This document shows, in pieces, positions 292 to 44,758 of a stretch of 45,254 bases of DNA (its first letter is position 1; every line of letters begins with the position of its first letter). Below the pieces are notes generated by a model, which was not told the origin of the DNA, searched no databases, and saw only the letters and a program-made list of their open reading frames with translations. A program made the translations under genes and the position numbers. Source of the stretch: Octopus sinensis (taxonomy: Eukaryota); contig NW_021834854.1 in NCBI RefSeq assembly GCF_006345805.1, forward strand, positions 1-45,254. The letters are read 5' to 3'.

Positions 292-654
292 GAGATGGAG
301 GAAAGTCCAAGAGAAAAGGAAGACGGAGGAAAGACTTGCCAACGATCCAAATTATATTGTGCACACACACACACGTATATATATATATATATATATATAT
401 AAATATCAGTAATGCAATACAAAGTATTGCCTTGCAGTAAAAAGTAGCCCGTGAGGGAAAAATACACAAATTAGTAAATAAATGGCACAACTAAGTACCG
501 ATATTACTGGAAATAGCGAACGTAAAAATACGACGCTAATGTGTAGCTTCACCGCGTACGTATTAGCAAAAATGTGTGTGTGCAACAAAATAGAAAAAAA
601 AACCGTCTTACCTCCAGGGGAAACATCTGAAAGATGAAACACCCGGAAAAGATA

Positions 655-733
655 ATATGGTACCTGCAGGTTTCAGGTTTTGCAAGAATATGTCTCTCAC
701 CCATATTTTTCTTTACCTTCTTCAGCCAAACAT
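655..733 (-). ncRNA. Type I hammerhead ribozyme (minus-strand copy)
   Basis: Minus strand: TGG-CTGAAGA-AGGT...AATATG/CATATT...ACCT-GAAA-CCTGCAGG-T-A-CCA. Core CUGAAGA/GAAA, stem II closed by AGGT/ACCT, stem III ACCTGCAGGT (palindrome), GUA cleavage triplet, stem I TGG/CCA. Confidence 0.8.
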
Positions 734-1196
734 ATACCAAGACGAAATCTACGATGTTACCACATTAATACTAACACACTCGACTGAAATACGGAACGCT
801 AACAGTACGAGAAACGGTGAAGAAGTTTCAACATATCAGTAATGCAATACAAAGTATTGCCTTCCAGTAAAAAGTAGCCCGTGAGGTAAGACGGTTTTTT
901 TTTCTCTATTTTGTTGCACACACGCATTTTTGCTAATACATACGCGGTGAAGCTACACATTAGCGTCGTATTTTTACGTTCGCTATTTCAAGTAAATATC
1001 GGTACTTAGTTGTGCCATTTATTTACTAATTTGTGTATTTTTCCCTCACGGGCTACTTTTTACTGGAAGGCAATATTTTGTATTGCAGTACTGATATTTT
1101 GAAACTTCTTCACCGTTTCTCGTACTGTTAGCGTTCCGTATTTCAGTCGAGTGTGTTAGTATTAATGTGGTAACATCGTAAATTTCGTCTTGGTAT

Positions 1197-1274
1197 ATGT
1201 TTGGCTGAAGAAGGTAAAGCAAAATATGGGTGAGAGACATATCTTGCAAAACCTGAAACCTGCAGGTACCACAT
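1197..1274 (+). ncRNA. Type I hammerhead ribozyme (plus-strand copy)
   Basis: CTGAAGA at 1205-1211. Stem II is AGGT(1212-15)/ACCT(1251-54) extended by GCAA/TTGC and ATATG/CATAT. GAAA at 1255-58, stem III ACCTGCAGGT at 1258-67, predicted cleavage after A1268 (GUA). Stem I is TGG/CCA plus ATG/CAT. Confidence 0.85.
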
Positions 1275-1464
1275 TATCCATTTTCCGGGTGTTTCATCTT
1301 TCAGATGTTCTCCCTGGAGGTAAGACGGTTTTTTTTTCTCTATTTTGTTGCACACCGCATTTTTGCTAATACATACGCGGTGAAGCTACACATTAGCGTC
1401 GTATTTTTACGTTCGCTATTTCCAGTAACTATCGGTACTTAGTTGTGCCATTTATTTACTAATT

Positions 1465-1498
<34 letters not shown>

Positions 1499-1499
<1 letters not shown>

Positions 1500-2668
1500 T
1501 AGCATTAAAGACCCCTCGTTGCCGGGTCATAGTGATAGTGCATGTATATATGTGTATATATATATGTGTACATATTACATGTACATCTATATATATACAT
1601 CTACACATAAAATACAAAATACAAAGTTATATCTTGATATCGCTAGTGATAACAATACTCAAAATATATAACAGACTGGAATTGTTAGCCTGTCACTTGT
1701 AATTTCGATCAATTGTATCTTGTCCTCCCACTTGTATAGAAATGTGGCTACAATCCAGCCTACCTCTACTTCGAGGTGGGGGGGGGTTGCCATTTAAAAT
1801 TTTTTTCAGGGACGTCCTACGTCCCAGATATAAAGGTAAAAATAAAATATTTCCACTTAGCAAGTTCGAGTCGAGTACTCTCTTGCACGATCCGTTGACT
1901 CGAACCTTGCTTCTATTGTGGCGAATTTAACGCCTCTGATTAGATACCTTTCATATTTGCACCAAGACACTTTTCGAAGGTGCTTTCCTCCATGCGTTCA
2001 AATATTCTTTTTTCTCTACATTGTATGCTTTATAGACAATAGTCTTTTTTTAAATCTAATTTTTTATTATCCATCTGAACTATTCCATTTCTGCACGCTA
2101 ATTTTATTTTTAATTTATTCCCATTCATGTGAAACCACTTATTCAAGTTCAAATCATTGATGCAATTTTATACCAATTGCTATTTTTACTTTTGTCATGT
2201 TTGATTTTAATTATTACTTACTACATATAATTCAATTGTTATTATTATTTTTATTGTTAAAGTGAAAGTATCTGACATAAAATAGAGAAACGTTTTTGTT
2301 TCTCTTTTAACACGTAATACTGAAATAGTGGAGAAGATATGATATTGCTATGGGCTCGCTCTAGGCAAGAAGTTGAACATTTTTTTGCCCATGAAACTAC
2401 ATGGACCCTAAGTAAGGCATGTGTAAAATTTGAATGGAATTGGTTGTGTTGTTCTCAAGTTTTAGAGAATCGTAGTGGAGAAGATATGATATTGCTGTGG
2501 GCTCGCCCTAGACAAAAAGTTCAAAATTTTTTTTGCCGATGACACTCCGCGGACCCTAAGTAAAACATGTGTAAATTTTGAATGAAATTAGTTGTGTAGT
2601 TCTCAAGTTTTAGAGAAACACACAGACAGACAGACAGACACACTTTCTCAGTTTTATATATATAAAGA
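1499..2668 (-). mobile_element. Non-autonomous Helitron-like element
   Basis: On the minus strand it begins A|TC and ends CTAG|T, with a GACCC..GGGTC hairpin ~8 nt before CTAG. Internal tandem repeat and (CAGA)n lie near the 5' end. No ORF. Confidence 0.75.
2326..2617. repeat. 147-bp tandem duplication inside the Helitron
   Basis: TAGTGGAGAAGATATGATATTGCT... starts at 2326 and again at 2473; both units end TTTAGAGAA. Confidence 0.9.
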
Positions 2669-3200: not shown

Positions 3201-3258
3201 GAAACAGAGTTGTATAGTTTTAAAAAAATATTTTTACTATTTCTACATATTTGTACAT

Positions 3259-3609
3259 AGGCGTAGGAGTGGCTGTGTGGTAAGTAGCTTGCTTACGAAC
3301 TACATGGTTCCGGGTTCAGTCCCACTGCGTGGCACCTTGGGCAACTGTCTTCTGCTACAGCCTCGGGCCGACCAAAGGCTTGTGAGTGGATTTGGTAGAC
3401 GGAAACTGAAAGAAGCCCGTCGTATATATGCATACATATATGTATGTGTGTGTATATATTTGTGTGTTTGTGTTTGACCTCCCAACATCGCTTGACAACT
3501 GGTGTGTTTATGTCACCGTAACTTAGCGGTTCGGCTAAAGAGACCGATAGAATAAGTACAAGGCTAACAAAGAATAAGTCTTGGGGTCGATTTGCTCGAC
3601 CAAAGGCGG
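3259..3609 (+). mobile_element. tRNA-derived SINE, family 1
   Basis: A-box-like TGGCTGTGTGGTAAG and B-box-like GGTTCAGTCCC, with an internal microsatellite. Closely matches 39147-39520 and fragments at 8323, 33586 and 43095. Confidence 0.85.
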
Positions 3610-3830: not shown

Positions 3831-4139
3831 TAACATTTTAGTATCCCCTCGTATATATATGTGTGTGTGTGTGTTAATTATTAGCGGTGGAATCAGAATT
3901 GATAACAAAAGGTAATCTGTATAGTTAACTGAAATCGTATGCCCTGTGTGAACACCGAATTTGCCTTGAGAGGTATTTTCCTTTAGGTACTTGGTGCACA
4001 AATGCACACACAGAGATCACAACAGACAGCAAACGAAAATCGTCCATCAACATCATGGGCGCATGGTATATATATATATATATACGTATAAAAATACATG
4101 TATGCATACATGTACCTCTCTCTTCCTCTCTCTGTCTGC

Positions 4140-4178
<39 letters not shown>

Positions 4179-4547
4179 CAGAGGGAGAGAGATAGGAAGA
4201 GAGAGGTACACATACATTTGATTTTTTTCCAACGTTTATATATAAATATTTTTTAAGTAAATGAATAAAATTAGAACACCGTAAGACATCGATAATCGTA
4301 TATTAGTAACTTTTTTAACTCGGAGTGGTGATGTTCATAGATTTCAGTAGGTGGAGTTTTTGCTTTTATGAGTATAAAGCAACATAGAGTAATTATATGT
4401 GCGTATAATTATGTGTATGCAGGTTGTGTATGTGTGTGTATGTGTGTGTGTTATAAGTAATGCTGATATTGACCGGCCGAGAAGCATATATTTATACATA
4501 TAGATTCATATACATATATATATAGATAACATTTATATACACACATA

Positions 4548-6625: not shown

Positions 6626-7289
6626 ATAAATTTAACCTTTAAAGGTATTTTTTAATATGCTGGCCATTGATAGAATTTTTTTCGAAAAATTTTATCCTAC
6701 ATTAGATCTTAATTTTACGTATATATATATATATGTGTGTGTGTGTGTTTACATATAGATATAGGTATATATATACACATATGTATGCATATATATATGT
6801 ATATATGCATATATATGTATATATGTACATATGTATACATATATACATGCATATATATATGTACACATATATATATTTATATAATTATACATGTAAATAT
6901 ATGTATACATTCTATATATATATATAATTATATGTATATATATATATATATATAATTATATGTATGTATATATATATACATATAAGTATGTATGTATATA
7001 TATATATATATATATTATGTATGTATGTATATATATATATATACATAGATATATATATATACATATATATATATATGTAATTAATATATATATATATTAT
7101 ATGTACATATTATATATATATATATACATATAATTATAATATATATTATATATATATATGTATATATATATAATATAATATATATATAATATATATATAT
7201 ATATGTACATATATATATGTATATATATATATATGTATATATATATGTATATATATATATATACATATATATACATACATATATATATA

Positions 7290-7500
7290 GGTGATCTGGC
7301 AGAAACGTCTGCACGCCGGGCGAAATGCTTAGCCGCATTTCCTCTGTCATTACGTTCTCAGTTCAAATTCCACCGAATTCGACATCGCTTCTATCTTTTC
7401 CGGGTCGATAAATTAAGTACTAGTTGCTTAATGGGATCGGTCTAATCTACTGGCCCCCTACTCCACAAATTTCGGCCCTTGTGCCTAGAGTTGAAAAGAA
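7290..7500 (+). mobile_element. tRNA-derived SINE, family 3
   Basis: Head CTGGCAGAAACG..GCACGCCGGGCGAAATGCTTAG, B-box-like AGTTCAAATTCC, central ..CTTTTCCGGGTCGATAAATTAAGTAC. Many homologues occur in the window. Confidence 0.8.
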
Positions 7501-7698: not shown

Positions 7699-8322
7699 CG
7701 CAAATACACAGACGCACTCCGACCCATGTACGACCCGGCGGCACACTTACCACGCACATGTAAACCTTAATACACATATAGATATATGCATGTATATACA
7801 TGTGTGTGTGTGTGTTATGTGTAAGTATACATATGTATGCATATACATATTAGTCCCTTCTTGATGGTCCTCCTCTCTCTCTCTCTCTTTTTTCTTTCCT
7901 TTCTCCTAACAAATATACATTAGCAAATCACTCGTACATGTTGTGCACTAGTTATAATGTTATTGCATCGATTCGACATTTATTGTTCATATTACTTGCC
8001 AGTTCGCTGGTTAGTCACATTGCTAATATTTGCAATCACATCGTTACTAATCAGTAAGAGTCAACAAGTGTGCAGAAGCTTTGTCAATAATACCTGTGGT
8101 AATTTATATGCCTCACCGTATAAACTTCCGTTTAAGCTACATAACAAAACCTAAATTGGCGTATGTTGCTGAAGAAGTTTCACCTTTTATAAATTAAATT
8201 TTCAAACGACTTGAAAAAAATTCACGGCTCCAGTCGAGTCGTCCATTACTGTTATTTGTACGTAAAATTACGACCTCTCTGTGAACAGTAATAGAGGTCT
8301 GTTTATATATATATATATATAT

Positions 8323-8478
8323 AACGGTATTCTTTTAGTTTTCGTCTACCGCATCTTACAAGAGTTTTATAGGCCTCAGGGCTTAAATAGAAGACTGTTA
8401 CTCATGGTGCCACGCAGTGGAACTGAACCTGAAACCGTGTACTAGGGAAGCGAACTTTTTATCACACTGCCACGTCTG
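8323..8478 (-). mobile_element. SINE family 1, 5' fragment
   Basis: Reverse complement of the head of 3259-3420 (GGTTCAGTTCCACTGCGTGGCACC). Confidence 0.7.
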
Positions 8479-12169: not shown

Positions 12170-12724
12170 GAAAGCCCTAATGCAGTACCAGGCAGTAGCT
12201 CACATGGAGTCTGATCTTAACTGATGGGAAGTGTTATCATGTAGATGTTTTTTCTAGGTGTACAAGATCGGATACAGCGAATATTCTACTCAGTATGACA
12301 TATTTTCTTGCAAGCTGCTTGACCGTAACCAGTTGAGCTTGTCACTTACTGGCTGACGATATGCGCATCTCTGATCCCGAGCATAAGTAGTGGGGGCGCA
12401 TCATAGCCATGTGTTAAGAGGATACCTTTGGGGTTTGAATAATTCACAGTTGGCAACATGCGAGTTTCGTTCAACATCCTTAAACAACCCATATTCAGGG
12501 ACCTTTTGAGGGGATGGGCTACTAGGCCTGAAGAACATTCTAGCTGGTCCCCAACTTCACGGTCATGCAGTGTCTATCTCGATCACCATGTCGTGCACAT
12601 ATGTTTGTGATGCATGTGCCTATTGTACCCTTATCAGACGTGTAGTCGTGATGTTAATACTGGGCTTCATATACTTGTACCCCATTGTCACTTTGATAGC
12701 ATACACTGCTCTCTCTCTCACTCA
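12170..12724 (+). mobile_element. Non-coding (TAA)n-embedded element X
   Basis: Matches the reverse complement of 35271-35745 throughout. It ends CTCTCTCACTCA followed by TAA-type repeats, and TAA tracts lie on both sides. Confidence 0.8.
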
Positions 12725-12750
12725 AGAATGATAACAATGATAATAATACA

Positions 12751-19335: not shown

Positions 19336-19355
19336 ATAATTATTGTTGTCTTTCA

Positions 19356-19529
19356 GACGGCCAGCTCGCAGAGTCGTTAGCATGCTGGACGAAATGCTTA
19401 GCAGTATTTCGGTCGTCCTTACGTTTTGAGTTCAAATTCCACCGAGGTTGACTTTGCCTTTCATCCTATCGGGTTCGATAAATTAAGTGCCAGTTGAATA
19501 CTGAGATCAATGTAACCGACACTTGAGAC

Positions 19530-19530: not shown

Positions 19531-19602
<72 letters not shown>

Positions 19603-19605
<3 letters not shown>

Positions 19606-22600
19606 TAGTTTTATTTTTATAGCGTGCTTTCACTTCACTACCGAGCGCAGCTCTGTGTGCCTTGGGTATGTGCTGTGATTTTTTGTGATGCTCTGATGGT
19701 TATTGTATGGAAAGTGTTCTGCGTAGGATGTGTGCAGTGCCTAGTAGTGCAATTTTCTGTATGTTATATGTGTTTGTAAGTCCTGGTGTTTTTTGTTATG
19801 TATTTGTCTGAATATATTTTATCATGCCTAATGCACCTACTATGATAGGAATTGTTTCTGTTTTCAGTTTCACACATCTAGTTACCTCTATTTTCAGGTC
19901 TTTGTATTTGAGAGTTTCTCCATTTCTTTTAGAGACACGTTGTCATCTGCCGGTATTGATACATCAATTAGAAAGCATTTTTTTCTTCATGATCTCTGAC
20001 AACTATATCTGGTCTGTTGGCCTTAATTTCTCTATCTGTGTGTATCGGCATATCTCAGAGTATGGTTGCTTTCTCGTTTTCTGTGACCTTTTCTGGTGTG
20101 TGCCTATACCATCTTTTCGTGTTGTTATTCCATAATGTTGGCATAGCTTCCAATGTATGTAGGTTCCAACTCTGTCATGTCTGTGAATATATTCCTTCTT
20201 AGCCAGGACTGGGCAGCTAGAGATAATATGATTTATTGTTTCTTGTCCATCTCCACATATTCTGCAGTTACTTGTAATATTTCTTTTCATTACATGTTTT
20301 TGGTAATTTCTGGTGGGGAGGCTTTGGTCTTGTGCTGCAATTAAAAATCCCTCTGTTTCTGCTTTGAGTCCTGAGCTTCTCAACCATTGCTGAATTTTTC
20401 TTTGTCTATTTCTTTTGCGTTTAGTTTAGTGCAGTATTTACCATGAAGGGCTTTTCTTGCCATCGTTTTATCATGGCTCGTTGCTGTTCTATTTTTAGTT
20501 TGGATTTCATTTGTTTTTATAGCTTTTGTTGTTTCTTCATCATCTTCTTCTTCTTCTTTGTGTTTATTAGGTGGTATGATTTCTTGTTTGTATTTGTCAG
20601 CTTCCTTAATACTGAGAACAGTTTTTTTTTTTTTTGCTGCTATCTGGATCAGTTTTCCTTCCTTCTGAAGTAGGTATTTTTGCAGTCCTATGGTGGTTAT
20701 TTTATAGTAGTTTTCCAGCTGTATAAGGCCTCTACCACCTTCTATACGTTGTATATATAGTCTTTCTATGTCAGATTTTGGGTGATGCATCCTAGATCCT
20801 GTCAGTATTTTTCTTGTTTTCCTATCTATTTTGGACAGTTCATTTCGTGTCCAGTTAAGGATATTGTAGCTGTAACTTATAACTGGGACAGCTAAAGTGT
20901 TGATACCTATTATCTTGTTTTTAGCATTGAGCTCTGTTTTTTTGTATTGATCTAACTCGTCTATAATATTCTTTTTTTATTTTCTCTTTCATTTGTGTGT
21001 GTGTGTCTTATCTAGTTCATGGATTCCTAAGTATTTGTAAGTTTGGCTTTGGTCTAATTCTTTTATTTCATTGGTTTTATCTAGTGTGATGTTGTTACTC
21101 TTAACTAGTTTTCCTCTTTTCATGGTTACTTTGGCGCATTTTTCTAATCCAAATTTCATATCTATTTCTTTGGTAAATCCATGAACTGTCTTTAATAGTG
21201 TTTTTCAGCTGTTTGTCATTTGCAGCGTATAGTTTTAGGTCATCCATATATAAAAGGTGGCTGATCGTTTTGCCGTAACATTTATATCCGCATCCATTCT
21301 ATTTAGCATATCAGATAGAGGTGACAGTGCCAAGCAGAAAAGGAGTGGAGAGAGCGTGTCTCCCTGGAATATTCCTCTTCTAATGGGGATGTCTTTGGTT
21401 TTCATGAGTCCCTCTTTTGTTGGAGGTGTAGGACTGTTTGCCATTTATTCATAGAGTGCTCTATGAATTTTATGATTGTTGGTGCTACTTTGTTAATGGC
21501 TAGTGTTTCGAGGATCCATGTGTGGGGGATGCTATCAAACGCCTTTTTGTAGTCAATCCAGGCCATACTGAGGCCTTTCTTCTTTCTGTGGCTGTCTTCA
21601 GTTACGGCTTTATTAATCATTAGTTGATCTTTACAGCCATATGAGCCTTTGCGGCATCCTTTCTGCTCTGGGAACAGTTTGTTTTCGTCCAGGTGCTTGT
21701 TCAGCCTTTGCGATATCACTGCAGTAAATGCCTTGAACATAGTAGGAGGCAGGTTATTGGTCTGTAGTTTTCTGGTTTTGTTGTTTCATTTGATTTGGGA
21801 ATTACGATGGTTTTTCCCCTTCGTGAGCCATTCAGGCATTGTCTCTGGCTCTGCTAGTATGCTGTTAAAGTTTTCAGCCAGCTTTTTGTGCATTCCTGTT
21901 AGATATTTCAACCAGAAGTTGGGGATCTTGTCATGCCCAGGTGCCTTCCAGTTGCTTAGTTTTTGCAGTGCCTGGGTGACCTCTTCAGTTGTTATGGGCG
22001 TCCAAAGTTGTTCAGATGCCGAGTTTGTTATTTTCATACTCCTTTTTTTTGGCTGTTTGTTCGTCGACCATATTTCTCTCCAGAATTCTTCCAATTCTTC
22101 TGCCGTTGGTGCTGCAGTGACTTCTATTTTATTTTTTCCCAGTTCTTGGTAGAACTTTTTGGGGTTGGAGTTGAACTTTTTGTTCTGTTCAAAGAAGCGT
22201 TGGCGTTTCTCGTACCGGCGGATCCTTTGAGCTTTGGCAAGGATATCTTGCTTCAGCTTTTCTTTTATCTCCGGCAAATCTTTTTCTGTGATGTTATATT
22301 TGCGGAGCATTTTTGTTCTCTTTTTGTTGCTCAGTAGCGTTGCTTGTTTGCTGATTTCATTAAGAATCGACAGGTCTTTTCTAATTTTTAAAATTTTGTT
22401 TTTGTATGTTATTTATCCACAGGTTTGTTTGGGTGGTGGTACTCCTGTTTGGGCGGGTTTGGGTGAGTATCCAGCTTCTTTTGTGGCTGCAGTGGCTGCT
22501 GCGTATATCAAGTCATTTAGTTCAGTGATATCACTTTTTTTTGTTTCAGTGGCTAGTTCAGTGACGGCTAGGTTTATGTTGTTTATAATTGGTGTTGTTA

Positions 22601-23730: not shown

Positions 23731-23955
23731 AGTGTCGAGCTGGCAAAATCGTTAGCACGCTGGACGAAATGCACAGCGGCCTTTCGTTCGTCATTACGTT
23801 CTGAGTTCAAATTCCGCCGAGGTTGACTTTGCCTTTCATACTTTCGGGGTTGATAAATAAAGCACCAATCTAATATTGGGTTTGATGTAATTGCTTATTC
23901 CCCGTTACCCAAATTTCAGGCCTTGTGACTTTAGTAGAAAGGATTATTATTATTA
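23731..23955 (+). mobile_element. SINE family 3 copy with (ATT)n tail
   Basis: GAGCTGGCAAAATCGTTAGCACGCTGGACGAAATG..GAGTTCAAATTCCGCCGAGGTTGACTTTGCC..AGTAGAAAGGATTATTATT. Confidence 0.85.
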
Positions 23956-31302: not shown

Positions 31303-31518
31303 ATCGGTTTCAAATATTCGCACGAGGCTAGCGATTGCGGGAGAAAGGGTTAAGTCGATTTTAACAGCCCCAGCGCCCAAATGGTATCTATTTAATCGAC
31401 CGTGAAAGGATGAAATGCAAAGTCGATCGCGGTAGAATTTGAACTCAGAACATATAAACGGACGAAACTCCGCTTTGTATTTTGTCCGGTCTGCAAACTA
31501 TCGTGCCAGCTACCGCCT
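31303..31518 (-). mobile_element. SINE family 3 copy
   Basis: Plus strand shows GAAAGGATGAAATGCAAAGTCGA..GAATTTGAACTCAGAAC..GCCAGCTACCGCC. Confidence 0.75.
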
Positions 31519-32277
31519 TCCTTCTACCAGATATTAATTAAAAAATACGCATAAAACGCACGCGCAGTCTCCCCACCCCACTAAACAATGTCATGAATGC
31601 GCATGAGCACTAGCCTGTCATTCTTTCACTACATCCAGCTAGTCCAATCGTGATATCCAGCTAGTGATATCTAACCACAACATCTAGCCCTAACCCCACC
31701 CCAAATAATAAACAGTACTCAATGTTAACACCATTCAGACCAATATTCCTCTGTCACCTTCAAATAATTTACTTCTTCCTCATTTATTTCTCACCTCTTA
31801 TTTTTCGACTTTTACAAATCCGTATTCTCTCTTCTCAATAAATCGTCCACTTTTTCAGTTGTACTGTTTCAACGTCAAAAAAGAAAAAAAAAAAAATATC
31901 TGTGACAACGTCCTTGCCTTTATTCACTGCTTAATCCTGATTTCCTATGAATTTGTATAATAATTTATGTATTTATTTATTCTCTTGCCGCCATTCTTTT
32001 CATCGTTCTCGTCATTGTTTGCTGCTATTATACTCGGAATGGATAAATGTCGAAATGATATTGCTCAAGAAAGATTAATTCGAGAAAATATTTGTCGATG
32101 TCTGCTTCTTTGGTTCATCAAACTAATTTATTACTAATCGAACCATAAACAATATTCTATGTTATAAATATCGTTCCTATATCCATATACTGAAACATAA
32201 ATGTGAGTGTGCATGTATGTATGTATGTATATATATAAATATATATATATATGTATAATGTATATATATGTATTATG

Positions 32278-33585: not shown

Positions 33586-33775
33586 CCTGGCCTATACTGC
33601 AGCCCCATCTTTTGTCGAGCAAATCGACACCAGGACTTATTCTTTGTAAGCCCGTACTTATTCTATCGGTTTCTTTTGTCGAACCGCTATGCTACATTGA
33701 CGTAAACACGTCAGCATCGGTTGTCAAGCGATGTTAGCGGGGGGAGGGGACAAACACAGACACACAAACACGAAC
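33586..33775 (-). mobile_element. SINE family 1, 3' fragment
   Basis: Reverse complement of ..ACATCGCTTGACAAC..GCGGTTCG..CCGATAGAATAAGTAC..CAAAGAATAAGTC. Confidence 0.75.
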
Positions 33776-34740
33776 ACACACACACACAAGCATGCACATG
33801 CGCGTGCGCGTAGAGTCTGCTTCCTGTGGGTTATAGGTTGATTCTTTTAGGAATATCTGATAAAGGCAACGTAGAGATCACTGACAGACATTACATTGCA
33901 AAATAGAGAGAGTGACAGAACGTGAGAAGAAGAGAGAGAGAGAGAGAAGAAATTTCACGGCCATATCACATTTTCTTTAGACATTGAACTTTCACGGCCT
34001 TATCACATTTTCTTTAGACATTAGCATTTGCGACACAGTCAACCAAAACAGGCATACACCAAAGGTTCCATTTCTGCATCCAGTGAGAAACATGCAATAT
34101 TAAACGATTTTGTAAGGGAAAAGATCTGAAATGTAAACCAGATGCATACATATCAACAACTTCCTAGATAATTTAATCGAAAAGTGAAATCTGAATAAGG
34201 CGTCATACGCTACTGTTTGGATTGATTGTATGCATATATGAATACTAACACTTCTATATCTATAACAAAACATCGTTTCTTCGGACTCATTATGCGTTGC
34301 TTTTTATCCTTTCGCACCGACAAAATGGGTGGCACTTGAGCACTGGGGTTGAGGCTTACATCTCCTCTTAAAACTGGTAGACGTGTGTCAAAATTTAACT
34401 AACTAAACATAGACGCACATAGAGATATACGCATCCGCAAATGAAGAAACATACAATAGAAATACAAAATGGCTGACGATTAGTAAGGAGAGACACACAA
34501 ATAAGAAAGAAGAAAACAAAGGACCATTGATGCGGTCACAGGAGTGTGACGAAAGAACTCTGGCCTAAATAAGATTAAGAGTAATGTAAAAAGTAAATAA
34601 CACTGAAGCAAAGTAACACCAAATATATAGTGCGCGTATTTTTATTGACTAAACTGGTAACATGACCATTCCGAAATACAACAATGTCTGTTTCAACACA
34701 CTACTTCACATAAGAAATCTTGCACAACAAATATATAAAC

Positions 34741-34811
<71 letters not shown>

Positions 34812-34833
34812 TATTATTATTACTATTATTATT

Positions 34834-35207
34834 CAGTAGTTTTATTTTTATAGCGTGCTTTTACTTCACTACCCAGCGCAGCTCTGTGTGCCTTGGGTAT
34901 GTACTGTGGTTTGTTGTGAGGCTCTTTTGGTTATTGTATGGAAAGTGTTCTGCGTAGGATGTGTGCAGTGCCTAGTAGTGCAATTTTCTGTATGTTATAC
35001 ATATTTGTAACTCCTGGTGTTTTTGTTATGTATTTGTCTGAATAATTTTTTATCATACCTAATGCACCTACTATGATTGAAATTGTTTCTGTTTTTAAAT
35101 TCCACATTCGAGTTACCTCTATTTCCAGGTCTTTGTATTTTGAAAGTTTCTCCATTTCTTTTGGAGAAACGTTGTCATCTGCTGGTATTGATACATCAAT
35201 TAGAAAG

Positions 35208-35210
<3 letters not shown>
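34834..35210 (-). mobile_element. 5'-truncated copy of the R4/Dong element in (TAA)n
   Basis: Highly similar to 19603-19979. It encodes MEKLSKYKDLEIEVTRMWNLK..ALLGTAHILRRTLSIQ* and has the same 3' junction. (TTA)n lies on both sides. Confidence 0.92.
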
Positions 35211-35270
<60 letters not shown>

Positions 35271-35271
<1 letters not shown>

Positions 35272-35745
35272 GAGTGAGAGAGCAGTTCATGCCAAAGTGA
35301 CACTGGGGTAAAATATACGAAGCCCAATATACCCATCATGACTACCCGTCTGATAAGGGTACACCAGGCACATGCATCACAACCATATGTGCGCGACATG
35401 GTGATCTCATATCAAGATAAACAGCGCATGACCTTGCAGGTGGGGCCCAGTTAGAATTTTCTTCAGGTTGAGTAGCCCATCCCGCTCAAACGGTCCCTGA
35501 ATAAGGGTTGTTTAAGGATGTTGAAAGAATCACCCATGTTTCCAGAGGTGAATTATTCAAACCCAAAGAATCCCTCTCAACACATGGCTATGATGCTCCC
35601 CCACTACTTCTGCTTGTGGTCAGAGATGCACATATTGTCAGCCACTAATGGACATGCTCAACTGGTTACGGTCAAACAACTGACAAGCAAATCTGTAGTA
35701 TTGAGCAGAATATTTGCTGTAGCCCATCTTTTACACCAAGACAAA
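35271..35745 (-). mobile_element. 5'-truncated copy of non-coding element X in (TAA)n
   Basis: Reverse complement of ~12255-12724 with the same CTCTCTCACTCA|ATAATA end. Pure (TTA)n lies on both sides. Confidence 0.82.
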
Positions 35746-39007: not shown

Positions 39008-39146
39008 TGCCTCTCTCTCTCTGCCTCTCTCTCTCTGCCCCTCTCTCTCTGCCTCTCTCTCTCTTTCTGCCTCTCTCTCTCTGCCTCTCTCTGTCTCTCG
39101 GTCTCTCTCTCTGTCTTTATATATTCATATACATACTTACATACGT

Positions 39147-39318
39147 AGGGGCAGGAATGACTGTGTGGTAAGTAGCTTGCTTACCAACCACATCGTTCCG
39201 GGTTCAGTCCTACTGCGTGGCACCTCGGGCAAGTGTCTTCTACTAGAGCTCCGGGCCGACCAAAGCCTTGTGAGGGGATTTGGTAGACGGAAACTGAAAG
39301 AAGCCCGTCGTATATATG

Positions 39319-39351
<33 letters not shown>

Positions 39352-39520
39352 TTGTCCCCTCAACAACGCTTGATGCTGGTGTGTTTAAGTCCTCGTAACT
39401 TAGCGGTTCGAAAAAAGAGTCCAATAGAATAAGTACTAGGTTTACAAAGAATAAGTCCTGGTGTCAATTTGCTCGATTAAAGGCGCATGGCCGCAGTCAA
39501 ATGACTGAAACAAGTAAAAG
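39147..39520 (+). mobile_element. tRNA-derived SINE, family 1
   Basis: Colinear with 3259-3609, including the internal microsatellite. Confidence 0.85.
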
Positions 39521-40350: not shown

Positions 40351-40583
40351 CCTATTTCTTTACTGCCCCACAAGTGGCTACACGTATAGGGGACAAACAA
40401 GGATAGACAAAGGGATTAAGTCGATTATATCGAGCCCAGTGCGTAACTGGTACTTAGTTACTCGACCCCGAAATGATGAATGTCAAAGTCGACATCGGCA
40501 GAATTTGAACTCAGAACGTAGCGGCAACGAAATATCGCTAAGCATTTCGCGCGGCGTGCTAACGTTTCTGTCACCTCGCCGCC
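40351..40583 (-). mobile_element. SINE family 3 copy (alternative 3' tail)
   Basis: Same head and centre as 7290-7500, but the tail is ..CACTTGTGGGGCAGTAAAGAAATAGG. Confidence 0.8.
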
Positions 40584-41137: not shown

Positions 41138-41370
41138 CCTATTTCTTTACTACTCACAAGGGGCTAAACACAGAGGGGACAAACAAGGACAGACAAACGG
41201 ATTAAGTCGATTACATCGACCCCAGTGCGTAACTGGTACTTAATTTATCGACCCCGAAAGGATGAAAGGCAAAGTCGACCTCGGCAGAATTTGAACTCAT
41301 AACGTAACGGCAGACGAAATACGGTTACGCATTTCGCCCGGCGTGCTAACGTTTCTGCCAGCTCGCCGCC
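41138..41370 (-). mobile_element. SINE family 3 copy (alternative tail), abutting an older family 3 fragment at 41099-41137
   Basis: Cleanest copy of the family: GGCGGCGAGCTGGCAGAAACGTTAGCACGCCGGGCG..GAGTTCAAATTCTGCCGAGGTCGACTTTGCCTTTCATCCTTTCGGGGTCGATAAATTAAGTACCAG..CCCCTTGTGAGTAGTAAAGAAATAGG. Confidence 0.85.
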
Positions 41371-42821
41371 ATTTATATATGTATGTACGTATGTATGTAT
41401 TTATGTATGTATGTACGCATGTATGTGTGTGTAAGTAGTTGTGTCTCCTTTCTCACTTTTCAGTGAGAGCTTACCACTTCATCCTTCTAATAAATTTGCA
41501 ATTTCTTACTCTTTATCATTTCCCTTGCAATTTATTTCGCGTTGCTCATGTGTGTATTCGGTGGTCGCGCACATGCGCATGCGTACGTATATGTATATAT
41601 GCTGAAGAGCGCGTGTGTCTGTGTGTGTTTGTGTGTGTTTGTGTGGTGGGGTGACTGTGGTTGTGCATATATTTTCTTCGTTTTTTATTTGTATTTTATG
41701 TCACTTAACATGTTTCATGTCATGTTAATAACGAACATCTCGCCTCTTACGACCTTGATGTATATAATATAATATAATATAATATAATATAATACACGGT
41801 GGATGTGAGATACCGTTTCGTGTGACTCTCCTGATGCCCGTACATTTATTTTTTCCGCGCTAATTAGCGGCTGAGGAAGCAATCGTCCAAATGGGTATCA
41901 CTAAACACACACACACACACCACACACGTGTTTATATTTATGCATATAGCCTGCAGCTTTCTGTTTTATGTTCTTCTAATATTTTTGTAAATATCTCCAC
42001 CCTGGGTCTCACCCTTAGATGTTGTTCTCGTTTTTGTTGATGTAATTTTTTTGCATTTAATTTGACGTCCACCGAAGGAAATTCCATTGTTGTGCCCTTT
42101 CATTGTTCACTGGTTAAAAAAAAGAGCTATTACATCTAAAAATAAAAAGTGCAGTGGCTGTAGAAGAGAGTGTCTGGAGAGGAGAAGGCTTCAGATAACA
42201 AAAAAATGTCGGAGGGGGAGGAATAACACAAACATACGAACAAACAAACAACAAACAATCAAAGAACTACAGAAACAGAGAAGTGTATAAATAAATATGT
42301 AAAATAATATGTGCTACCTAAGGAGAATTATAATATACATACATGAGCAAATGTAGGACCGTAGTCCCATAATGTGTGTGGAAGGTTCTTTACAGTTCTT
42401 TATTTCTTTTTTAGGATAAGAATTCTAAAGTTCTATGTTCTTTTTAGCTAATTCTTTCTATAATAAAATCATTCCTAATTTCAGATGGAAATTTGACCAG
42501 CGATGAACGAAAGTAGATCATCAAATAATTCTGGAAAACAGAGGATGCAAAAAAGTTTTGATAGTTAAGATTAAGATTAACAGTTTACGGAGTATGTAAC
42601 AAATCTGAGCAGATTGGGTCCATCTGCATTGCATAGAAACGTAGTCGACTGGTCAGTGTTACCACTGAAGAAGATGTAATATAAAGCATTCACTGAAAAT
42701 CTCCAGAAGTCAAAACCGGTGCCTTCGGGTTGACTAGTCATCTCCCAGAGATCCCTTCCTTGACTTATGAAATGCTAAGGTAAAAAGAAATAGTGAAATT
42801 AAAAAACTATGAGGGGATGGG

Positions 42822-42918
42822 CCAGTCCAGTCGATTGGATCGATACCATTACGCAACTGGTACTTAAATTATCGACCCCGAAAGGATGAAAGGCAAATTT
42901 GACCTCGACGGAATTTGC
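42822..42918 (-). mobile_element. SINE family 3 central fragment
   Basis: TTATCGACCCCGAAAGGATGAAAGGCAAATTTGACCTCGACGGAATTTG. Confidence 0.7.
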
Positions 42919-43094: not shown

Positions 43095-43205
43095 ATATTT
43101 TAAGCCTAGCACTCATTCTATCGCCGAAATGCTAAGTTACGGGGAAGTAAACACACCATTGGTTGTGAAACGGTGATGGGGGGACAAACACATACACAAA
43201 CAAAT
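43095..43205 (-). mobile_element. SINE family 1, degenerate 3' fragment
   Basis: CATTCTATCG..GCTAAGTTACGGGGAAGTAAACACACC..GGGGGACAAACAC. Confidence 0.55.
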
Positions 43206-43924
43206 ATGAACGTTCACACACACACACACTTAGCGAAGCGCATGATATCTGAAGGAGTATTGTATGTATAGCAATATATGTAGTTATCTAGGCTCATTTA
43301 TATTCATGTAAACTGGCATTATAATAGATTCAAGTGTATACGAACTTGAGAAAACATTTAACATCGGAGAAAATTCTTCCACGACCATCTCCGCAGCACA
43401 ACGTCTACTCACGTCCGAATACAAGTGTCCGCGTTAAGTATGACTTTTCGCGAGTATTTTCAATTGAATACTGCTGATGCTTCGTGTAAACTTATTTATA
43501 TTGATTTCCACTCAATTTGTATTAATTTACTTCATCGATAATTAGAATTTCAATGTGAAAATTTTCTCATCTTCTTACAAACATAACCACATCAAAAGAA
43601 CATGCCTACGACAAGAATCGCGTCCGACATTGCAAGCCTTTTAGTTAAAGCGGTATATTGCGTTTGAGTAAAGAAGTTAATGAATCGACAATCTTTCAAA
43701 ATGCCTCTTTTATACAAATTGGACGATTATCTCTTGATGAACATAAAAGATCACTTCTTAAAGGATCATTAGACATGTTACCGACAGAGAAAAAATTCTA
43801 ATCACATTACCTTGGCAACACTTCCAGTCGGTTCGGAATTTCACAAGTGAAACTTAGCAAGTTGCATTTCCATACTTCTCTCTTTCAAATCGTGTTGTTT
43901 ACATCAGAAGTACCCGCTGGGGTA

Positions 43925-44348: not shown

Positions 44349-44367
44349 GTGTCTATAACTAACTGGG
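43925..44367. mobile_element. Foldback element with short unique TIRs enclosing a palindromic microsatellite core
   Basis: TA|CCCAGTTAGTTAGGGACACATCTATC ... GATAGATGTGTCTATAACTAACTGGG|TA. The interior is (TATC)n-(TC)n-(TA)n-(GA)n-(GATA)n. Confidence 0.7.
44044..44077 (+). mobile_element. 34-bp 3'-terminal remnant of the (TATC)n-associated retroelement
   Basis: TCTGTGTGCAGCCCTGTGTGGCTAATAAAGAAAC sits between two pure (TATC)n tracts. Confidence 0.7.
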
Positions 44368-44379
44368 TAATACTTCATA

Positions 44380-44656
44380 ATTGGGGTTCAGCAAAGATTT
44401 GCTTCACCACATACCGAAGTTTAGAAATAGCAGTCAAAAAATCTTACCTATTCCTTCTACTTTAAAAGGGAAAAATAACGAAAATCAATCAACATCGATT
44501 GATTTTCGTTATTTTCCCTTTTGCCTGCGTGGATTGTTTTCAAGTACTTTGGTTTTTCTGGGAGCCCCTTTTAAAGTAGAAGGAATAGGTATGATTTTTT
44601 GACCGCTATTTCTAAACTTCGGTATGTGGTGAAGCAAATCTTTGCTGAACCCTAAT
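44380..44656. mobile_element. Young MITE with ~91-bp near-perfect TIRs and TA target duplication
   Basis: Arms 44380-44470 and 44566-44656 differ at only a few positions. TA lies at 44378-79 and 44657-58. An internal hairpin occupies 44466-44520. Confidence 0.85.
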
Positions 44657-44758
44657 TATAAAGTATTACTTAAGCTTACCATGAAATGGTCTTTTTCATG
44701 CCGAAATCTACTTGGTGAAATTACTGATTACTTCTTAATTAATTAATTTTACCCTTTG

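What the first reader, a model, noticed from the sequence alone, without database searches (positions are those of the whole stretch)
403..1467. Circularly permuted, inverted hammerhead-ribozyme repeat: candidate cephalopod retrozyme (circular RNA retroelement)
Seen: a ~430-bp unit occurs as ABCA on one strand and as BCAB on the other. Each arm is longer than one monomer and starts at a different point of the same cycle. Each carries a complete type I hammerhead (CUGAAGA, GAAA, GUA triplet, three stems, palindromic stem III ACCUGCAGGU). There is no ORF, and (TA)n flanks both ends. Known: non-LTR retrozymes of animals are few-hundred-nt hammerhead-bearing tandem units expressed as circular RNAs, and Penelope-like elements carry similar hammerheads in pseudo-LTRs, often with an inverted partial copy. 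Inference: permuted, more-than-one-round copies are what reverse transcription around a circular RNA would leave. This locus has only one hammerhead per strand, so it would be an insertion product rather than a self-sufficient circle source.
Basis: partly seen in the sequence, partly recalled or inferred. Interest (0 to 1): 0.86.

Follow-up and report, generated by a model that had tools for sequence, protein, structure and literature searches.

The report
Inverted hammerhead-repeat retroelement insertion in (TA)n
A 1.07-kb stretch is a dead, slightly decayed insertion of a ~433-base non-coding repeat that carries a hammerhead self-cleaving RNA motif. It was copied inward from both sides of a (TA)n microsatellite, as Penelope-like retroelements and their small parasites ("retrozymes") insert, so it is a good example of a known kind and not a new one.

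Summary
Window 403-886 and 887-1467 are two inverted arms of one ~433-nt unit. Each arm is longer than one unit, each starts at a different point of the cycle, pairwise substitution divergence is 2-3.5%, and there is no ORF above 78 aa. (TA)n lies on both flanks.

A complete type I hammerhead core sits once per arm on opposite strands: CUGAAGA, GAAA, A15.1-U16.1, GUA, and the palindrome ACCUGCAGGU as helix III. My descriptor finds it nowhere else in 45 kb. Dinucleotide shuffles give 0.017 relaxed hits per window. Rfam's hammerhead models do not detect it. It has A10.1-U11.1 where G-C is usual, and a 43-nt helix II.

In hammerhead-sense orientation the arms are head-to-head, with 3' ends in (TA)n and 5' ends joined through a 4-nt GAGG/CCTC microhomology. 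The 3' end of one arm abuts the 5' end of the other on the unit, with a 5-13 nt gap. This is the footprint of priming from both target strands (twin priming) on oligomeric unit RNA, and it matches published Penelope-like element behaviour.

A circular RNA template is possible but not needed, and a linear 2.5-mer or longer fits slightly better. No other copies could be retrieved, so covariation, activity, circles and the host organism remain untested. Verdict: new member of a known kind.

The parts
376..402 (.). Left remnant of the target (TA)n microsatellite, preceded by (CA)n at 362-374. The ATAT at 403-406 is shared with the element end (microhomology).
   Evidence: Read directly. Repeat families D1-D3.
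403..886 (-). Arm 1: 484 nt, 1.12 units. Hammerhead-sense is the minus strand. It covers unit positions 209/213 -> ~431 -> 262, with its 3' end at 403 and its 5' end at 886.
648..739 (-). Hammerhead motif, arm 1 copy: CUGAAGA 725-719, helix II 718-675, GAA 674-672, helix III palindrome 671-662, H17 = 661. The predicted cleavage lies between 661 and 660. Helix II carries a C>A change and a 1-nt insertion relative to arm 2. The forced hammerhead fold is -8.8 kcal/mol against an MFE of -21.0.
883..886 (.). Head-to-head junction of the two 5' ends. GAGG (CCTC on the other strand) is shared by both arms, so the two cDNA 3' ends (...GAGG-3' and ...CCTC-3') are mutually complementary.
   Evidence: (D9, D10).
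887..1467 (+). Arm 2: 581 nt, 1.34 units. Hammerhead-sense is the plus strand. It covers unit positions 49/53 -> 434 -> 199/203, with its 5' end at 887 and its 3' end at 1467-1471.
1191..1281 (+). Hammerhead motif, arm 2 copy (the better preserved). Helix I 5' strand ~1191-1204, CUGAAGA 1205-1211, helix II 1212-1254 (4 bp AGGU/ACCU, a 3x3 A-rich internal loop, 4 + 5 bp, a 9-nt loop), GAA 1255-1257, A15.1-U16.1 plus 2 bp plus a UGCA loop = palindrome 1258-1267, H17 = A1268, helix I 3' strand 1269-~1281.
   Evidence: The dimer cofold gives a 10-bp helix III at -51.3 kcal/mol, against 2 x -21.3.
1467..1498 (.). Right remnant of the target (TA)n, 16 repeats. The element sequence TTTGT(G)TAT merges into it.

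Best explanation
This is a single, now decaying insertion of a ~433-nt non-coding, hammerhead-bearing non-autonomous retroelement. It is of the animal non-LTR retrozyme type, meaning a small passenger of Penelope-like element (PLE) reverse transcriptase/endonuclease.

Proposed mechanism:
1. An AT-preferring endonuclease nicked both strands of a (CA)n(TA)n microsatellite.
2. Each exposed (TA)n 3' end annealed to a short UA-rich site in oligomeric unit RNA, at ...CUGAUAU (unit position 262) and ...AAUUUGU(GUAU) (position 199-203), and primed reverse transcription inward.
3. One cDNA ran 1.12 rounds and the other 1.34 rounds, each reading straight through the hammerhead cleavage site. The template was therefore uncleaved or re-ligated.
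4. The two cDNA 3' ends annealed through GAGG/CCTC and were filled in, leaving two head-to-head arms.
5. Arm 1's 5' end (position 209) lies 5-13 nt from arm 2's 3' end (199-203). The simplest template is therefore one continuous RNA of about 1,075 nt (2.5 units), with the second primer annealed where the first cDNA stopped. This is the twin priming described for L1.

Shown: the anatomy, the polarity, the microhomologies, the hammerhead motif and its improbability by chance, the absence of an ORF, the excess RNA structure, and the equal divergence of all rounds.

Inferred: the RNA intermediate, the PLE enzyme, the linear oligomer template, and past ribozyme activity. With only one hammerhead per strand the locus cannot release unit RNA, so it is a dead end.
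For: - Repeat anatomy and unit-coordinate map.
- Hammerhead core plus three helices, found only at this locus in 45 kb on both strands. Chance expectation is 0.017 per window for the relaxed descriptor and 0 of 300 shuffles at the observed quality.
- The motif meets the published core and adjacent-pair criteria of Perreault et al. (PMC3088659).
- It has the short palindromic helix III typical of metazoan type I hammerheads that act as dimers (PMC4209133). The cofolded dimer forms a 10-bp helix III.
- In hammerhead-sense orientation both arms have their 3' ends at the (TA)n flanks and their 5' ends at the centre. This is what target-primed synthesis requires, and it is the published PLE arrangement: partial tandem, an adjacent inverted 5'-truncated copy, and a (TA)n bias (PMC8557442).
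- A purified PLE protein nicks and extends both target strands, prefers AT-rich DNA, starts internally on the RNA, and uses unprocessed multimeric RNA (PMC11167929).
- The sense-strand circular fold is -114 to -116 kcal/mol with z = -4.4. The antisense strand gives z = -2.95.
- GC is 37-38% and no ORF exceeds 78 aa, as for non-LTR retrozymes (PMC7229834).
- Substitution divergence is 2.0-3.5% for every pair of overlapping rounds, the same within and between arms. This indicates one event from near-identical units.
- The arms differ, and the inverted join lies at non-homologous unit positions, which argues against an assembly artefact.
Against: - No Rfam hammerhead model detects the motif, even at E<=10 on 126 bases.
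- The 10.1-11.1 pair is A-U, whereas G-C is the most conserved helix pair after 15.1-16.1.
- As a monomer the hammerhead fold is not the MFE: -17.1 against -21.3 kcal/mol.
- Only one locus is available. There is no second copy in the window or in any searchable collection. There is therefore no covariation, no copy number, and no tandem master array.
- The four differences between the two hammerhead copies are not compensatory.
- There is no PLE ORF in the window. The only reverse transcriptase is a degraded LINE.
- A target-site duplication cannot be seen inside (TA)n.
- The contiguity of arm ends has roughly a 4-9% chance of arising at random on a 433-nt cycle (my calculation).
Confidence: 0.55

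Rival explanations
1. The enzyme and element are the same, but each arm was copied by reverse transcriptase running more than once around a monomeric ~433-nt circular RNA made by hammerhead cleavage and ligation.
For: - Both arms exceed one unit and cross the cleavage site seamlessly.
- All rounds are equally diverged, as expected if every round was read from one identical circle.
- The sense strand folds far better than shuffles when treated as a circle.
- Animal retrozymes accumulate as circular RNAs (PMC7229834).
Against: - An uncleaved homogeneous oligomer predicts every one of these observations.
- The purified PLE uses unprocessed multimeric RNA, and hammerhead mutants insert equally well (PMC11167929).
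- On a 433-nt circle the first cDNA would have met the second primer's site after about 50 nt, not after about 480 nt. The observed abutment of arm ends is then a coincidence (inference).
Confidence: 0.2
2. An ordinary fragment of an autonomous Penelope-like element. The ~433-nt unit would be its pseudo-LTR/UTR, here 5'-truncated so that no ORF remains.
For: - PLE pseudo-LTRs carry type I hammerheads with palindromic helix III and a long helix II.
- PLE insertions are heavily 5'-truncated, inverted and partially tandem.
- Retrozyme consensus sequences match PLE pseudo-LTRs in Xenopus (bioRxiv 10.64898/2026.07.22.740005).
Against: - In both arms the sequence closes on itself after 430-434 nt with no intervening ORF. 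The template was therefore a tandem of the short unit, not pLTR-ORF-pLTR.
- There is no RT or GIY-YIG remnant near the locus.
Confidence: 0.1
3. A piece of hammerhead-bearing satellite DNA (about 2.5 tandem units) that later suffered a DNA-level inversion (fold-back or replication template switch). The present arrangement would not come directly from retrotransposition.
For: - An inversion of the first 1.34 units of a direct 2.5-unit array, with a 5-13 nt loss and a 4-nt microhomology, reproduces the structure exactly.
- Hammerhead repeats were first described as satellite DNA.
Against: - One inversion breakpoint would have to coincide with the outer boundary of the array at the (TA)n.
- Priming from both strands produces the arrangement in one step and is documented for PLEs.
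Confidence: 0.08
4. An assembly artefact (chimeric or fold-back read), or a MITE/foldback DNA transposon with long terminal inverted repeats.
For: Inverted repeats are error-prone in assemblies (noted for PLEs). The window does contain a true MITE-like palindrome at 44367-44669.
Against: - The arms differ by 2.6-3.0% in substitutions plus indels, and they have different lengths and different end points.
- The central join lies between non-homologous unit positions with only 4 nt shared. An overlap assembler would not create such a join.
- The outer termini of the two arms are different sequences, so there are no terminal inverted repeats as in a MITE.
Confidence: 0.04

Closest known systems
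Animal non-LTR retrozymes (Cervera & de la Pena 2020, PMC7229834; Li, Clavereau & Pollet 2026 preprint)
   Same: - Non-coding unit of a few hundred nt. The published range is 150-450 bp and the mussel units are 350-390 bp.
- Low GC.
- Type I hammerhead with short helix III.
- Strongly self-paired predicted RNA.
- No LTR, PBS or PPT.
- Proposed dependence on PLEs.
   Different: - Here there are only 1.1-1.3 units per arm, in inverted orientation, so no two same-strand hammerheads.
- The hammerhead has A10.1-U11.1 and a 43-nt helix II and is missed by Rfam.
- Expression and circularity are unknown.
- No cephalopod retrozyme family turned up in the searched literature, although 235 Rfam Hammerhead_1 loci were reported in the giant squid genome.
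Penelope-like element insertions (pseudo-LTR partial tandems with an inverted 5'-truncated copy; Craig et al. 2021, PMC8557442; Frangieh et al. 2024, PMC11167929)
   Same: - Head-to-head inverted arms.
- Partial tandem.
- (TA)n/AT-rich target.
- Hammerhead in the repeated part.
- Both target strands used as primers.
- Internal start of reverse transcription.
- One end extends further than the other: here about 60 nt, against the published 30-40 bp 'tail'.
   Different: - No RT/GIY-YIG ORF.
- The tandem period is 433 nt, not 3-4 kb.
- The RT start sites here show UA microhomology with the target, whereas the purified PLE protein (PAc) started at a site not homologous to the target.
L1 twin priming
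   Same: The inverted upstream segment and the direct downstream segment are nearly contiguous on the template (5-13 nt missing). The 5' ends are joined through a short microhomology, and the 3' ends face outward at the target.
   Different: The template is a short oligomeric repeat with no poly(A), the target is (TA)n, and the presumed enzyme is a GIY-YIG/telomerase-like RT, not L1 ORF2p.
Dimer-dependent type I hammerheads of newt/axolotl satellite repeats and PLE minimal hammerheads (PMC4209133, PMC7229834)
   Same: The weak helix III is capped by a palindromic loop, so two copies can form an extended helix III. As in PLE variants, helix II is longer than in canonical hammerheads.
   Different: - Helix III here has 3 bp, against 1-2 bp.
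- There is no bulged base between A9 and 10.1.
- The 10.1-11.1 pair is A-U, not the conserved G-C.
- Helix II is much longer and interrupted.

Membership tests
Hammerhead ribozyme, type I | Conserved core C3 U4 G5 A6 N7 G8 A9 / G12 A13 A14 / A15.1-U16.1 / H17 | tested here: met
   CUGAAGA 1205-1211, GAA 1255-1257, A1258-U1267, A1268. The mirror copy is at 725-661 on the minus strand. The criteria are those of PMC3088659.
Hammerhead ribozyme, type I | Three helices with paired positions adjacent to the core, and helix I open (type I) | tested here: met
   1.1-2.1 is C-G, 10.1-11.1 is A-U, 15.1-16.1 is A-U. Helix I has 3 bp, a mismatch, then 2 bp. Helix II has 4 bp plus an extension. Helix III has 3 bp plus UGCA. 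A-U at 10.1-11.1 departs from the usual G-C.
Hammerhead ribozyme, type I | Recognised by the curated covariance models (Rfam Hammerhead_1 and relatives) | tested here: not met
   No hammerhead family at gathering score or at E<=10 on 1.3 kb and on 126 bases. The likely causes are the 43-nt helix II and A10.1-U11.1. I could not test a trimmed construct.
Hammerhead ribozyme, type I | Helices maintained by compensatory changes across family members | not testable with these tools
   Only two copies are available. Their four differences are non-compensatory. No further copies were found.
Hammerhead ribozyme, type I | Mg2+-dependent self-cleavage 3' of H17 | not testable with these tools
   This needs in vitro transcription of 1190-1285 as monomer and dimer.
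Animal non-LTR retrozyme | Non-coding unit of ~150-450 bp with low GC and no LTR/PBS/PPT | tested here: met
   Unit of 430-434 nt with 37-38% GC. The longest ORF is 78 aa. Definition from PMC7229834.
Animal non-LTR retrozyme | Head-to-tail tandem copies with two or more same-strand hammerheads (dimers to multimers) | tested here: not met
   At this locus each arm has 1.1-1.3 units and one hammerhead, on opposite strands. Arrays elsewhere in the genome could not be examined.
Animal non-LTR retrozyme | Highly self-paired predicted RNA | tested here: met
   Circular MFE of -114.2 and -116.2 kcal/mol, z = -4.4 against 150 dinucleotide shuffles, about 60% of bases paired.
Animal non-LTR retrozyme | Expressed as linear and circular unit-length RNA | not testable with these tools
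   No transcriptome of the source organism is available here.
Penelope-like element (autonomous) or its pseudo-LTR | ORF with telomerase-like RT and GIY-YIG endonuclease between the repeats | tested here: not met
   There is no ORF in the unit. The only RT in the window is a degraded LINE at 20006-22412 with RVT_1 and zf-RVT.
Penelope-like element (autonomous) or its pseudo-LTR | Insertion signature: partial tandem, adjacent inverted 5'-truncated copy, AT-rich/(TA)n target | tested here: met
   compared with PMC8557442 and PMC11167929.
MITE / foldback DNA transposon | Identical terminal inverted repeats at the two outer ends | tested here: not met
   The outer ends correspond to unit positions 262 and 199-203, which are different sequences.

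The most novel reading that the evidence does not exclude
The unit is an active or recently active, undescribed retrozyme family of a cephalopod-like genome. Its functional hammerhead variant (A10.1-U11.1, 43-nt interrupted helix II, dimer-dependent) escapes Rfam. This locus would be a clean genomic footprint of both-strand (twin) priming on a single oligomeric retrozyme RNA. That would be direct structural evidence that animal retrozymes are inserted by the PLE machinery from uncleaved multimers and not from circles.
Probability: 0.3. Interest if true: 0.55.

Novelty: new member of a known kind. Interest (0 to 1): 0.35.

Why it matters
How animal retrozymes move is still inferred mostly from co-occurrence with Penelope-like elements. 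A young insertion whose two arms, end points and microhomologies can all be read shows what the enzyme did. It primed from both (TA)n strands at UA-rich sites, read through the ribozyme site, and joined the two cDNAs by 4 nt. If the family's other copies show the same end points, the family would allow a direct test of linear-oligomer against circular templates. It would also add a hammerhead variant that current covariance models miss. As a single decayed copy, the locus has no expected function. The one possible exception is a ~480-bp hairpin RNA if the locus is transcribed through.

Tried and rejected
- Rfam scans at gathering score and at E<=10 gave no hammerhead. The 'miRNA' hits at 1458-1600 and 352-429 are (TA)n/(TG)n hairpins, far below gathering score, and I treat them as false.
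- Search for more copies in the window by blastn with word size 7 and by nhmmer on the masked window: none.
- Search in public collections: two metagenome scans and one viral scan, all with zero hits.
- Two searches of the 5.8-billion-protein set with the unit's longest open frames, hoping to catch spurious gene calls on other copies: nothing.
- Attempt to name the organism through the LINE fragment: only unnamed 39-55% identical fragments. 'Cephalopod' stays unverified. Base composition and repeat content are merely compatible with it.
- tRNA scan for a SINE-type head: none.
- Relaxed minimal-hammerhead descriptor with a bulge and no helix III: only the same two sites.
- Local hairpins next to the reverse-transcription start sites: not better than shuffles, so I make no claim about an RT-recognition stem-loop.
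- MITE, assembly artefact and autonomous PLE fragment were considered and rejected on end-point, divergence and ORF evidence.
Full report
**1. Observation**

The region 403-1467 consists of two inverted arms of one repeat.

- The repeat finder reports five long inverted pairs at 96-99% complementarity that tile the region.
- It also reports direct repeats at spacing 430 (403-459/833-889) and 433-434 (878-921/1312-1355 and 923-1038/1356-1471). Each arm is therefore longer than one unit.
- BLAST of one unit against the window gives E-values down to 1e-172 and no other copy in 45 kb. nhmmer on the window with the locus masked also finds none.
- Reading the sequence and aligning the four 'rounds' fixes the limits. 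Arm 1 is 403-886 and arm 2 is 887-1467. The tetranucleotide GAGG (883-886) belongs to both arms.
- (TA)n lies at 376-402 and 1467-1498.
- The longest ORF from a start codon is 78 aa and the longest stop-to-stop frame is 88 aa.

**2. The hammerhead motif**

On the plus strand of arm 2 the sequence reads:
- CUGAAGA (1205-1211);
- a 43-nt helix II (1212-1254): AGGU/ACCU, a 3x3 A-rich internal loop, 4 + 5 further pairs and a 9-nt loop;
- GAA (1255-1257);
- A15.1-U16.1 plus two C-G pairs closing a UGCA loop, which is the palindrome ACCUGCAGGU (1258-1267);
- A1268 as H17;
- a helix I 3' strand that pairs with the bases before CUGAAGA (3 bp, a mismatch, 2 bp, then bulged extensions).

The mirror copy lies on the minus strand of arm 1, from C3 = 725 to H17 = 661.

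A generic descriptor that I wrote (core, three helices, helix II span up to 70 nt) finds exactly these two sites in the whole window on both strands. A minimal-hammerhead variant of the descriptor finds the same two and nothing else. In 300 dinucleotide-preserving shuffles of the window, the relaxed descriptor hit 0.017 times per window, and no hit was as good as the real sites. Chance is therefore a poor explanation for a motif that sits in a 433-nt repeat.

The motif satisfies the core and adjacent-pair criteria used by Perreault et al. (PMC3088659). Its helix III is the short, palindromically capped type described for metazoan type I hammerheads that work as dimers (PMC4209133; PMC7229834). 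In line with this, two copies cofold with a 10-bp intermolecular helix III at -51.3 kcal/mol, against 2 x -21.3 for separate monomers. As a monomer the hammerhead fold (-17.1) is not the MFE.

Points against:
- No Rfam hammerhead model reports the site at gathering score or at E<=10, even on 126 bases.
- The 10.1-11.1 pair is A-U where G-C is strongly conserved.
- The arm 1 copy has a C>A change and a 1-nt insertion that damage helix II. Its forced hammerhead fold is -8.8 against an MFE of -21.0 kcal/mol.
- The four differences between the two copies are not compensatory.

The motif is complete on paper. Its activity is not established.

**3. Polarity and geometry**

The hammerhead strand is minus in arm 1 and plus in arm 2. 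In sense orientation the two arms therefore meet 5' end to 5' end at 883-887, and their 3' ends face outward into (TA)n.

On unit coordinates (1 = first base after GUA):
- arm 2 covers 49/53 -> 434 -> 199/203;
- arm 1 covers 209/213 -> ~431 -> 262.

Both arms read straight through the predicted cleavage site. The template was therefore uncleaved or re-ligated RNA, not a cleaved linear monomer.

Both outer ends fall where the unit itself reads UAU-like sequence: CTGATAT|, and TTTGT|(G)TAT. This gives microhomology with the (TA)n target.

At the centre, the two cDNA 3' ends implied by the arms would be ...GTGAGG-3' and ...TTACCTC-3'. These are complementary over 4 nt.

Arm 2's 3' end (199-203) and arm 1's 5' end (209-213) are 5-13 nt apart on the unit. 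If this is not chance (about 4-9% on a 433-nt cycle by my calculation), the whole insertion derives from one continuous template of about 1,075 nt (2.5 units). In that model the first cDNA stopped where the second primer had annealed. This is the logic of L1 twin priming, which I cite from my own knowledge.

**4. One event or several**

Substitution divergence between every pair of overlapping rounds is 2.0-3.5%. It is no lower within an arm (2.0% and 3.5%) than between arms (2.6-3.0%). In the three-copy stretches the changes are mostly private to single copies. This fits a single insertion from near-identical units, followed by neutral decay of roughly 1-2% per copy. It argues against a fold-back read artefact, whose arms would be identical. 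It also argues against an assembler mis-join, because the inverted junction lies between non-homologous unit positions.

**5. RNA properties**

Folded as a circle, the sense monomer reaches -114.2 kcal/mol (arm 2) and -116.2 kcal/mol (arm 1). Shuffles average about -90 with sd 5.6-5.9, giving z = -4.4. The antisense strand gives z = -2.95. GC is 37-38%. A strongly self-paired, low-GC, non-coding unit of 150-450 nt with a type I hammerhead is the published description of animal non-LTR retrozymes (PMC7229834). Small hairpins next to the two reverse-transcription start points are not better than shuffles, so I make no claim about a recognition stem-loop.

**6. Comparison with what is known**

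- Craig et al. describe PLE insertions as heavily 5'-truncated partial tandems. They often have an inverted 5'-truncated copy adjacent to the 5' end, a (TA)n target bias in some clades, and a 30-40 bp 'tail' at one end (PMC8557442).
- Frangieh et al. showed that a purified PLE protein nicks and extends both target strands, prefers AT-rich DNA, starts reverse transcription internally on the RNA, and uses unprocessed multimeric RNA. Hammerhead mutants insert equally well (PMC11167929).
- A 2026 preprint argues that vertebrate retrozymes are non-autonomous PLE derivatives.

The present locus shows all the insertion features but has no RT/GIY-YIG ORF. The only reverse transcriptase in the window is a degraded LINE at 20006-22412. 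In both arms the sequence cycles at 433 nt, so the template was a tandem (or circle) of the short unit, not pLTR-ORF-pLTR. I therefore file it as a retrozyme-type, PLE-dependent non-autonomous element. One caveat applies: one defining feature, two or more same-strand hammerheads in tandem, is not met at this locus and could not be examined elsewhere in the genome.

**7. Circle or oligomer**

A homogeneous uncleaved oligomer predicts the same arms, the same read-through of the cleavage site, and the same equal divergence. Two things tilt toward a linear oligomer. The first is the in vitro substrate preference of the PLE enzyme. The second is the abutting arm ends. On a 433-nt circle the first cDNA would have met the second primer's site after about 50 nt instead of about 480 nt. 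I put a linear template of 2.5 units or more ahead of a circle, at roughly 0.55 against 0.2, and neither is shown.

**8. What could not be done**

- No further copy of the unit could be retrieved from the metagenome or viral collections, or from the protein collection via the unit's open frames. Covariation, copy number, master arrays and linkage to PLE ORFs remain open.
- The organism could not be named. The window is 66% A+T and full of microsatellites and SINE-like repeats. That is compatible with a cephalopod but not diagnostic of one.
- In the searched literature, cephalopod genomes are reported to hold recently active Penelope families (Octopus vulgaris, PMC13282606) and 235 Rfam Hammerhead_1 loci (giant squid, PMC6962438). 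I found no description of a cephalopod retrozyme family.

**9. Verdict**

The feature is real and well preserved. It is best explained as a both-strand-primed insertion of a hammerhead-bearing non-autonomous retroelement into (TA)n. It is a new member of a known kind. Its value is as a readable footprint of the insertion mechanism and as a hammerhead variant that Rfam misses. The locus itself is a dead copy.

Noticed in passing
window 44367-44669: A 303-bp near-palindrome. The outer arms are 104 nt and 96% complementary (44367-44470 / 44566-44669), and there is an inner 26-nt inverted pair. It sits between microsatellites. Both outer termini carry the same sequence, so it looks like a MITE/foldback DNA element, unlike the hammerhead locus.
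   Followed up: partly
window 20006-22412 (minus strand): A degraded non-LTR (LINE) retrotransposon split into several frames. Pfam gives RVT_1 (21405-21785, E = 3e-10) and zf-RVT (20006-20425, E = 2e-6). The closest database proteins are only 39-55% identical and unnamed. It is not a Penelope-like element.
   Followed up: partly
window 2326-2617: Two tandem copies of a 148-bp unit, 87% identical. The nature of the unit is unknown.
   Followed up: no
window 3244-3608, 39130-39485, 8304-8473, 33609-33786, 43117-43226: A dispersed SINE-like repeat family, 74-84% identical between copies and often next to microsatellites. ARAGORN finds no tRNA-like head anywhere in the window.
   Followed up: no
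window 7249-7451, 19355-19520, 23736-23902, 31341-31526, 40351-40583, 41138-41412, 42829-42917: A second dispersed short-repeat family with seven or more copies in both orientations, 72-88% identical.
   Followed up: no
window 19531-19982 and 34762-35214; 12249-12748 and 35244-35745: Two further repeat pairs: a direct pair at 93% identity over 455 bp, and an inverted pair at 82% over 508 bp. The 34762-35214 copy holds the open frame at 34934-35209, which I took for the tail of a LINE ORF.
   Followed up: no
window 4111-4210: A 100-bp palindrome centred on (TA)n, with CT-rich and AG-rich 50-nt arms 86% complementary and no spacer. Its origin is unexplained.
   Followed up: no
window 352-429 and 1458-1600: At permissive E-values Rfam reports many 'microRNA precursor' matches (mir-297, mir-3149, mir-5014 and others). 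All are 40-70 bits below their gathering scores and all lie on (TA)n/(TG)n microsatellite hairpins. I treat them as false positives.
   Followed up: yes
window 403-1467: If transcribed through on either strand, the two arms would fold back into a hairpin RNA about 480 bp long and about 96% paired. This is a conceivable small-RNA source. No expression data are available.
   Followed up: no
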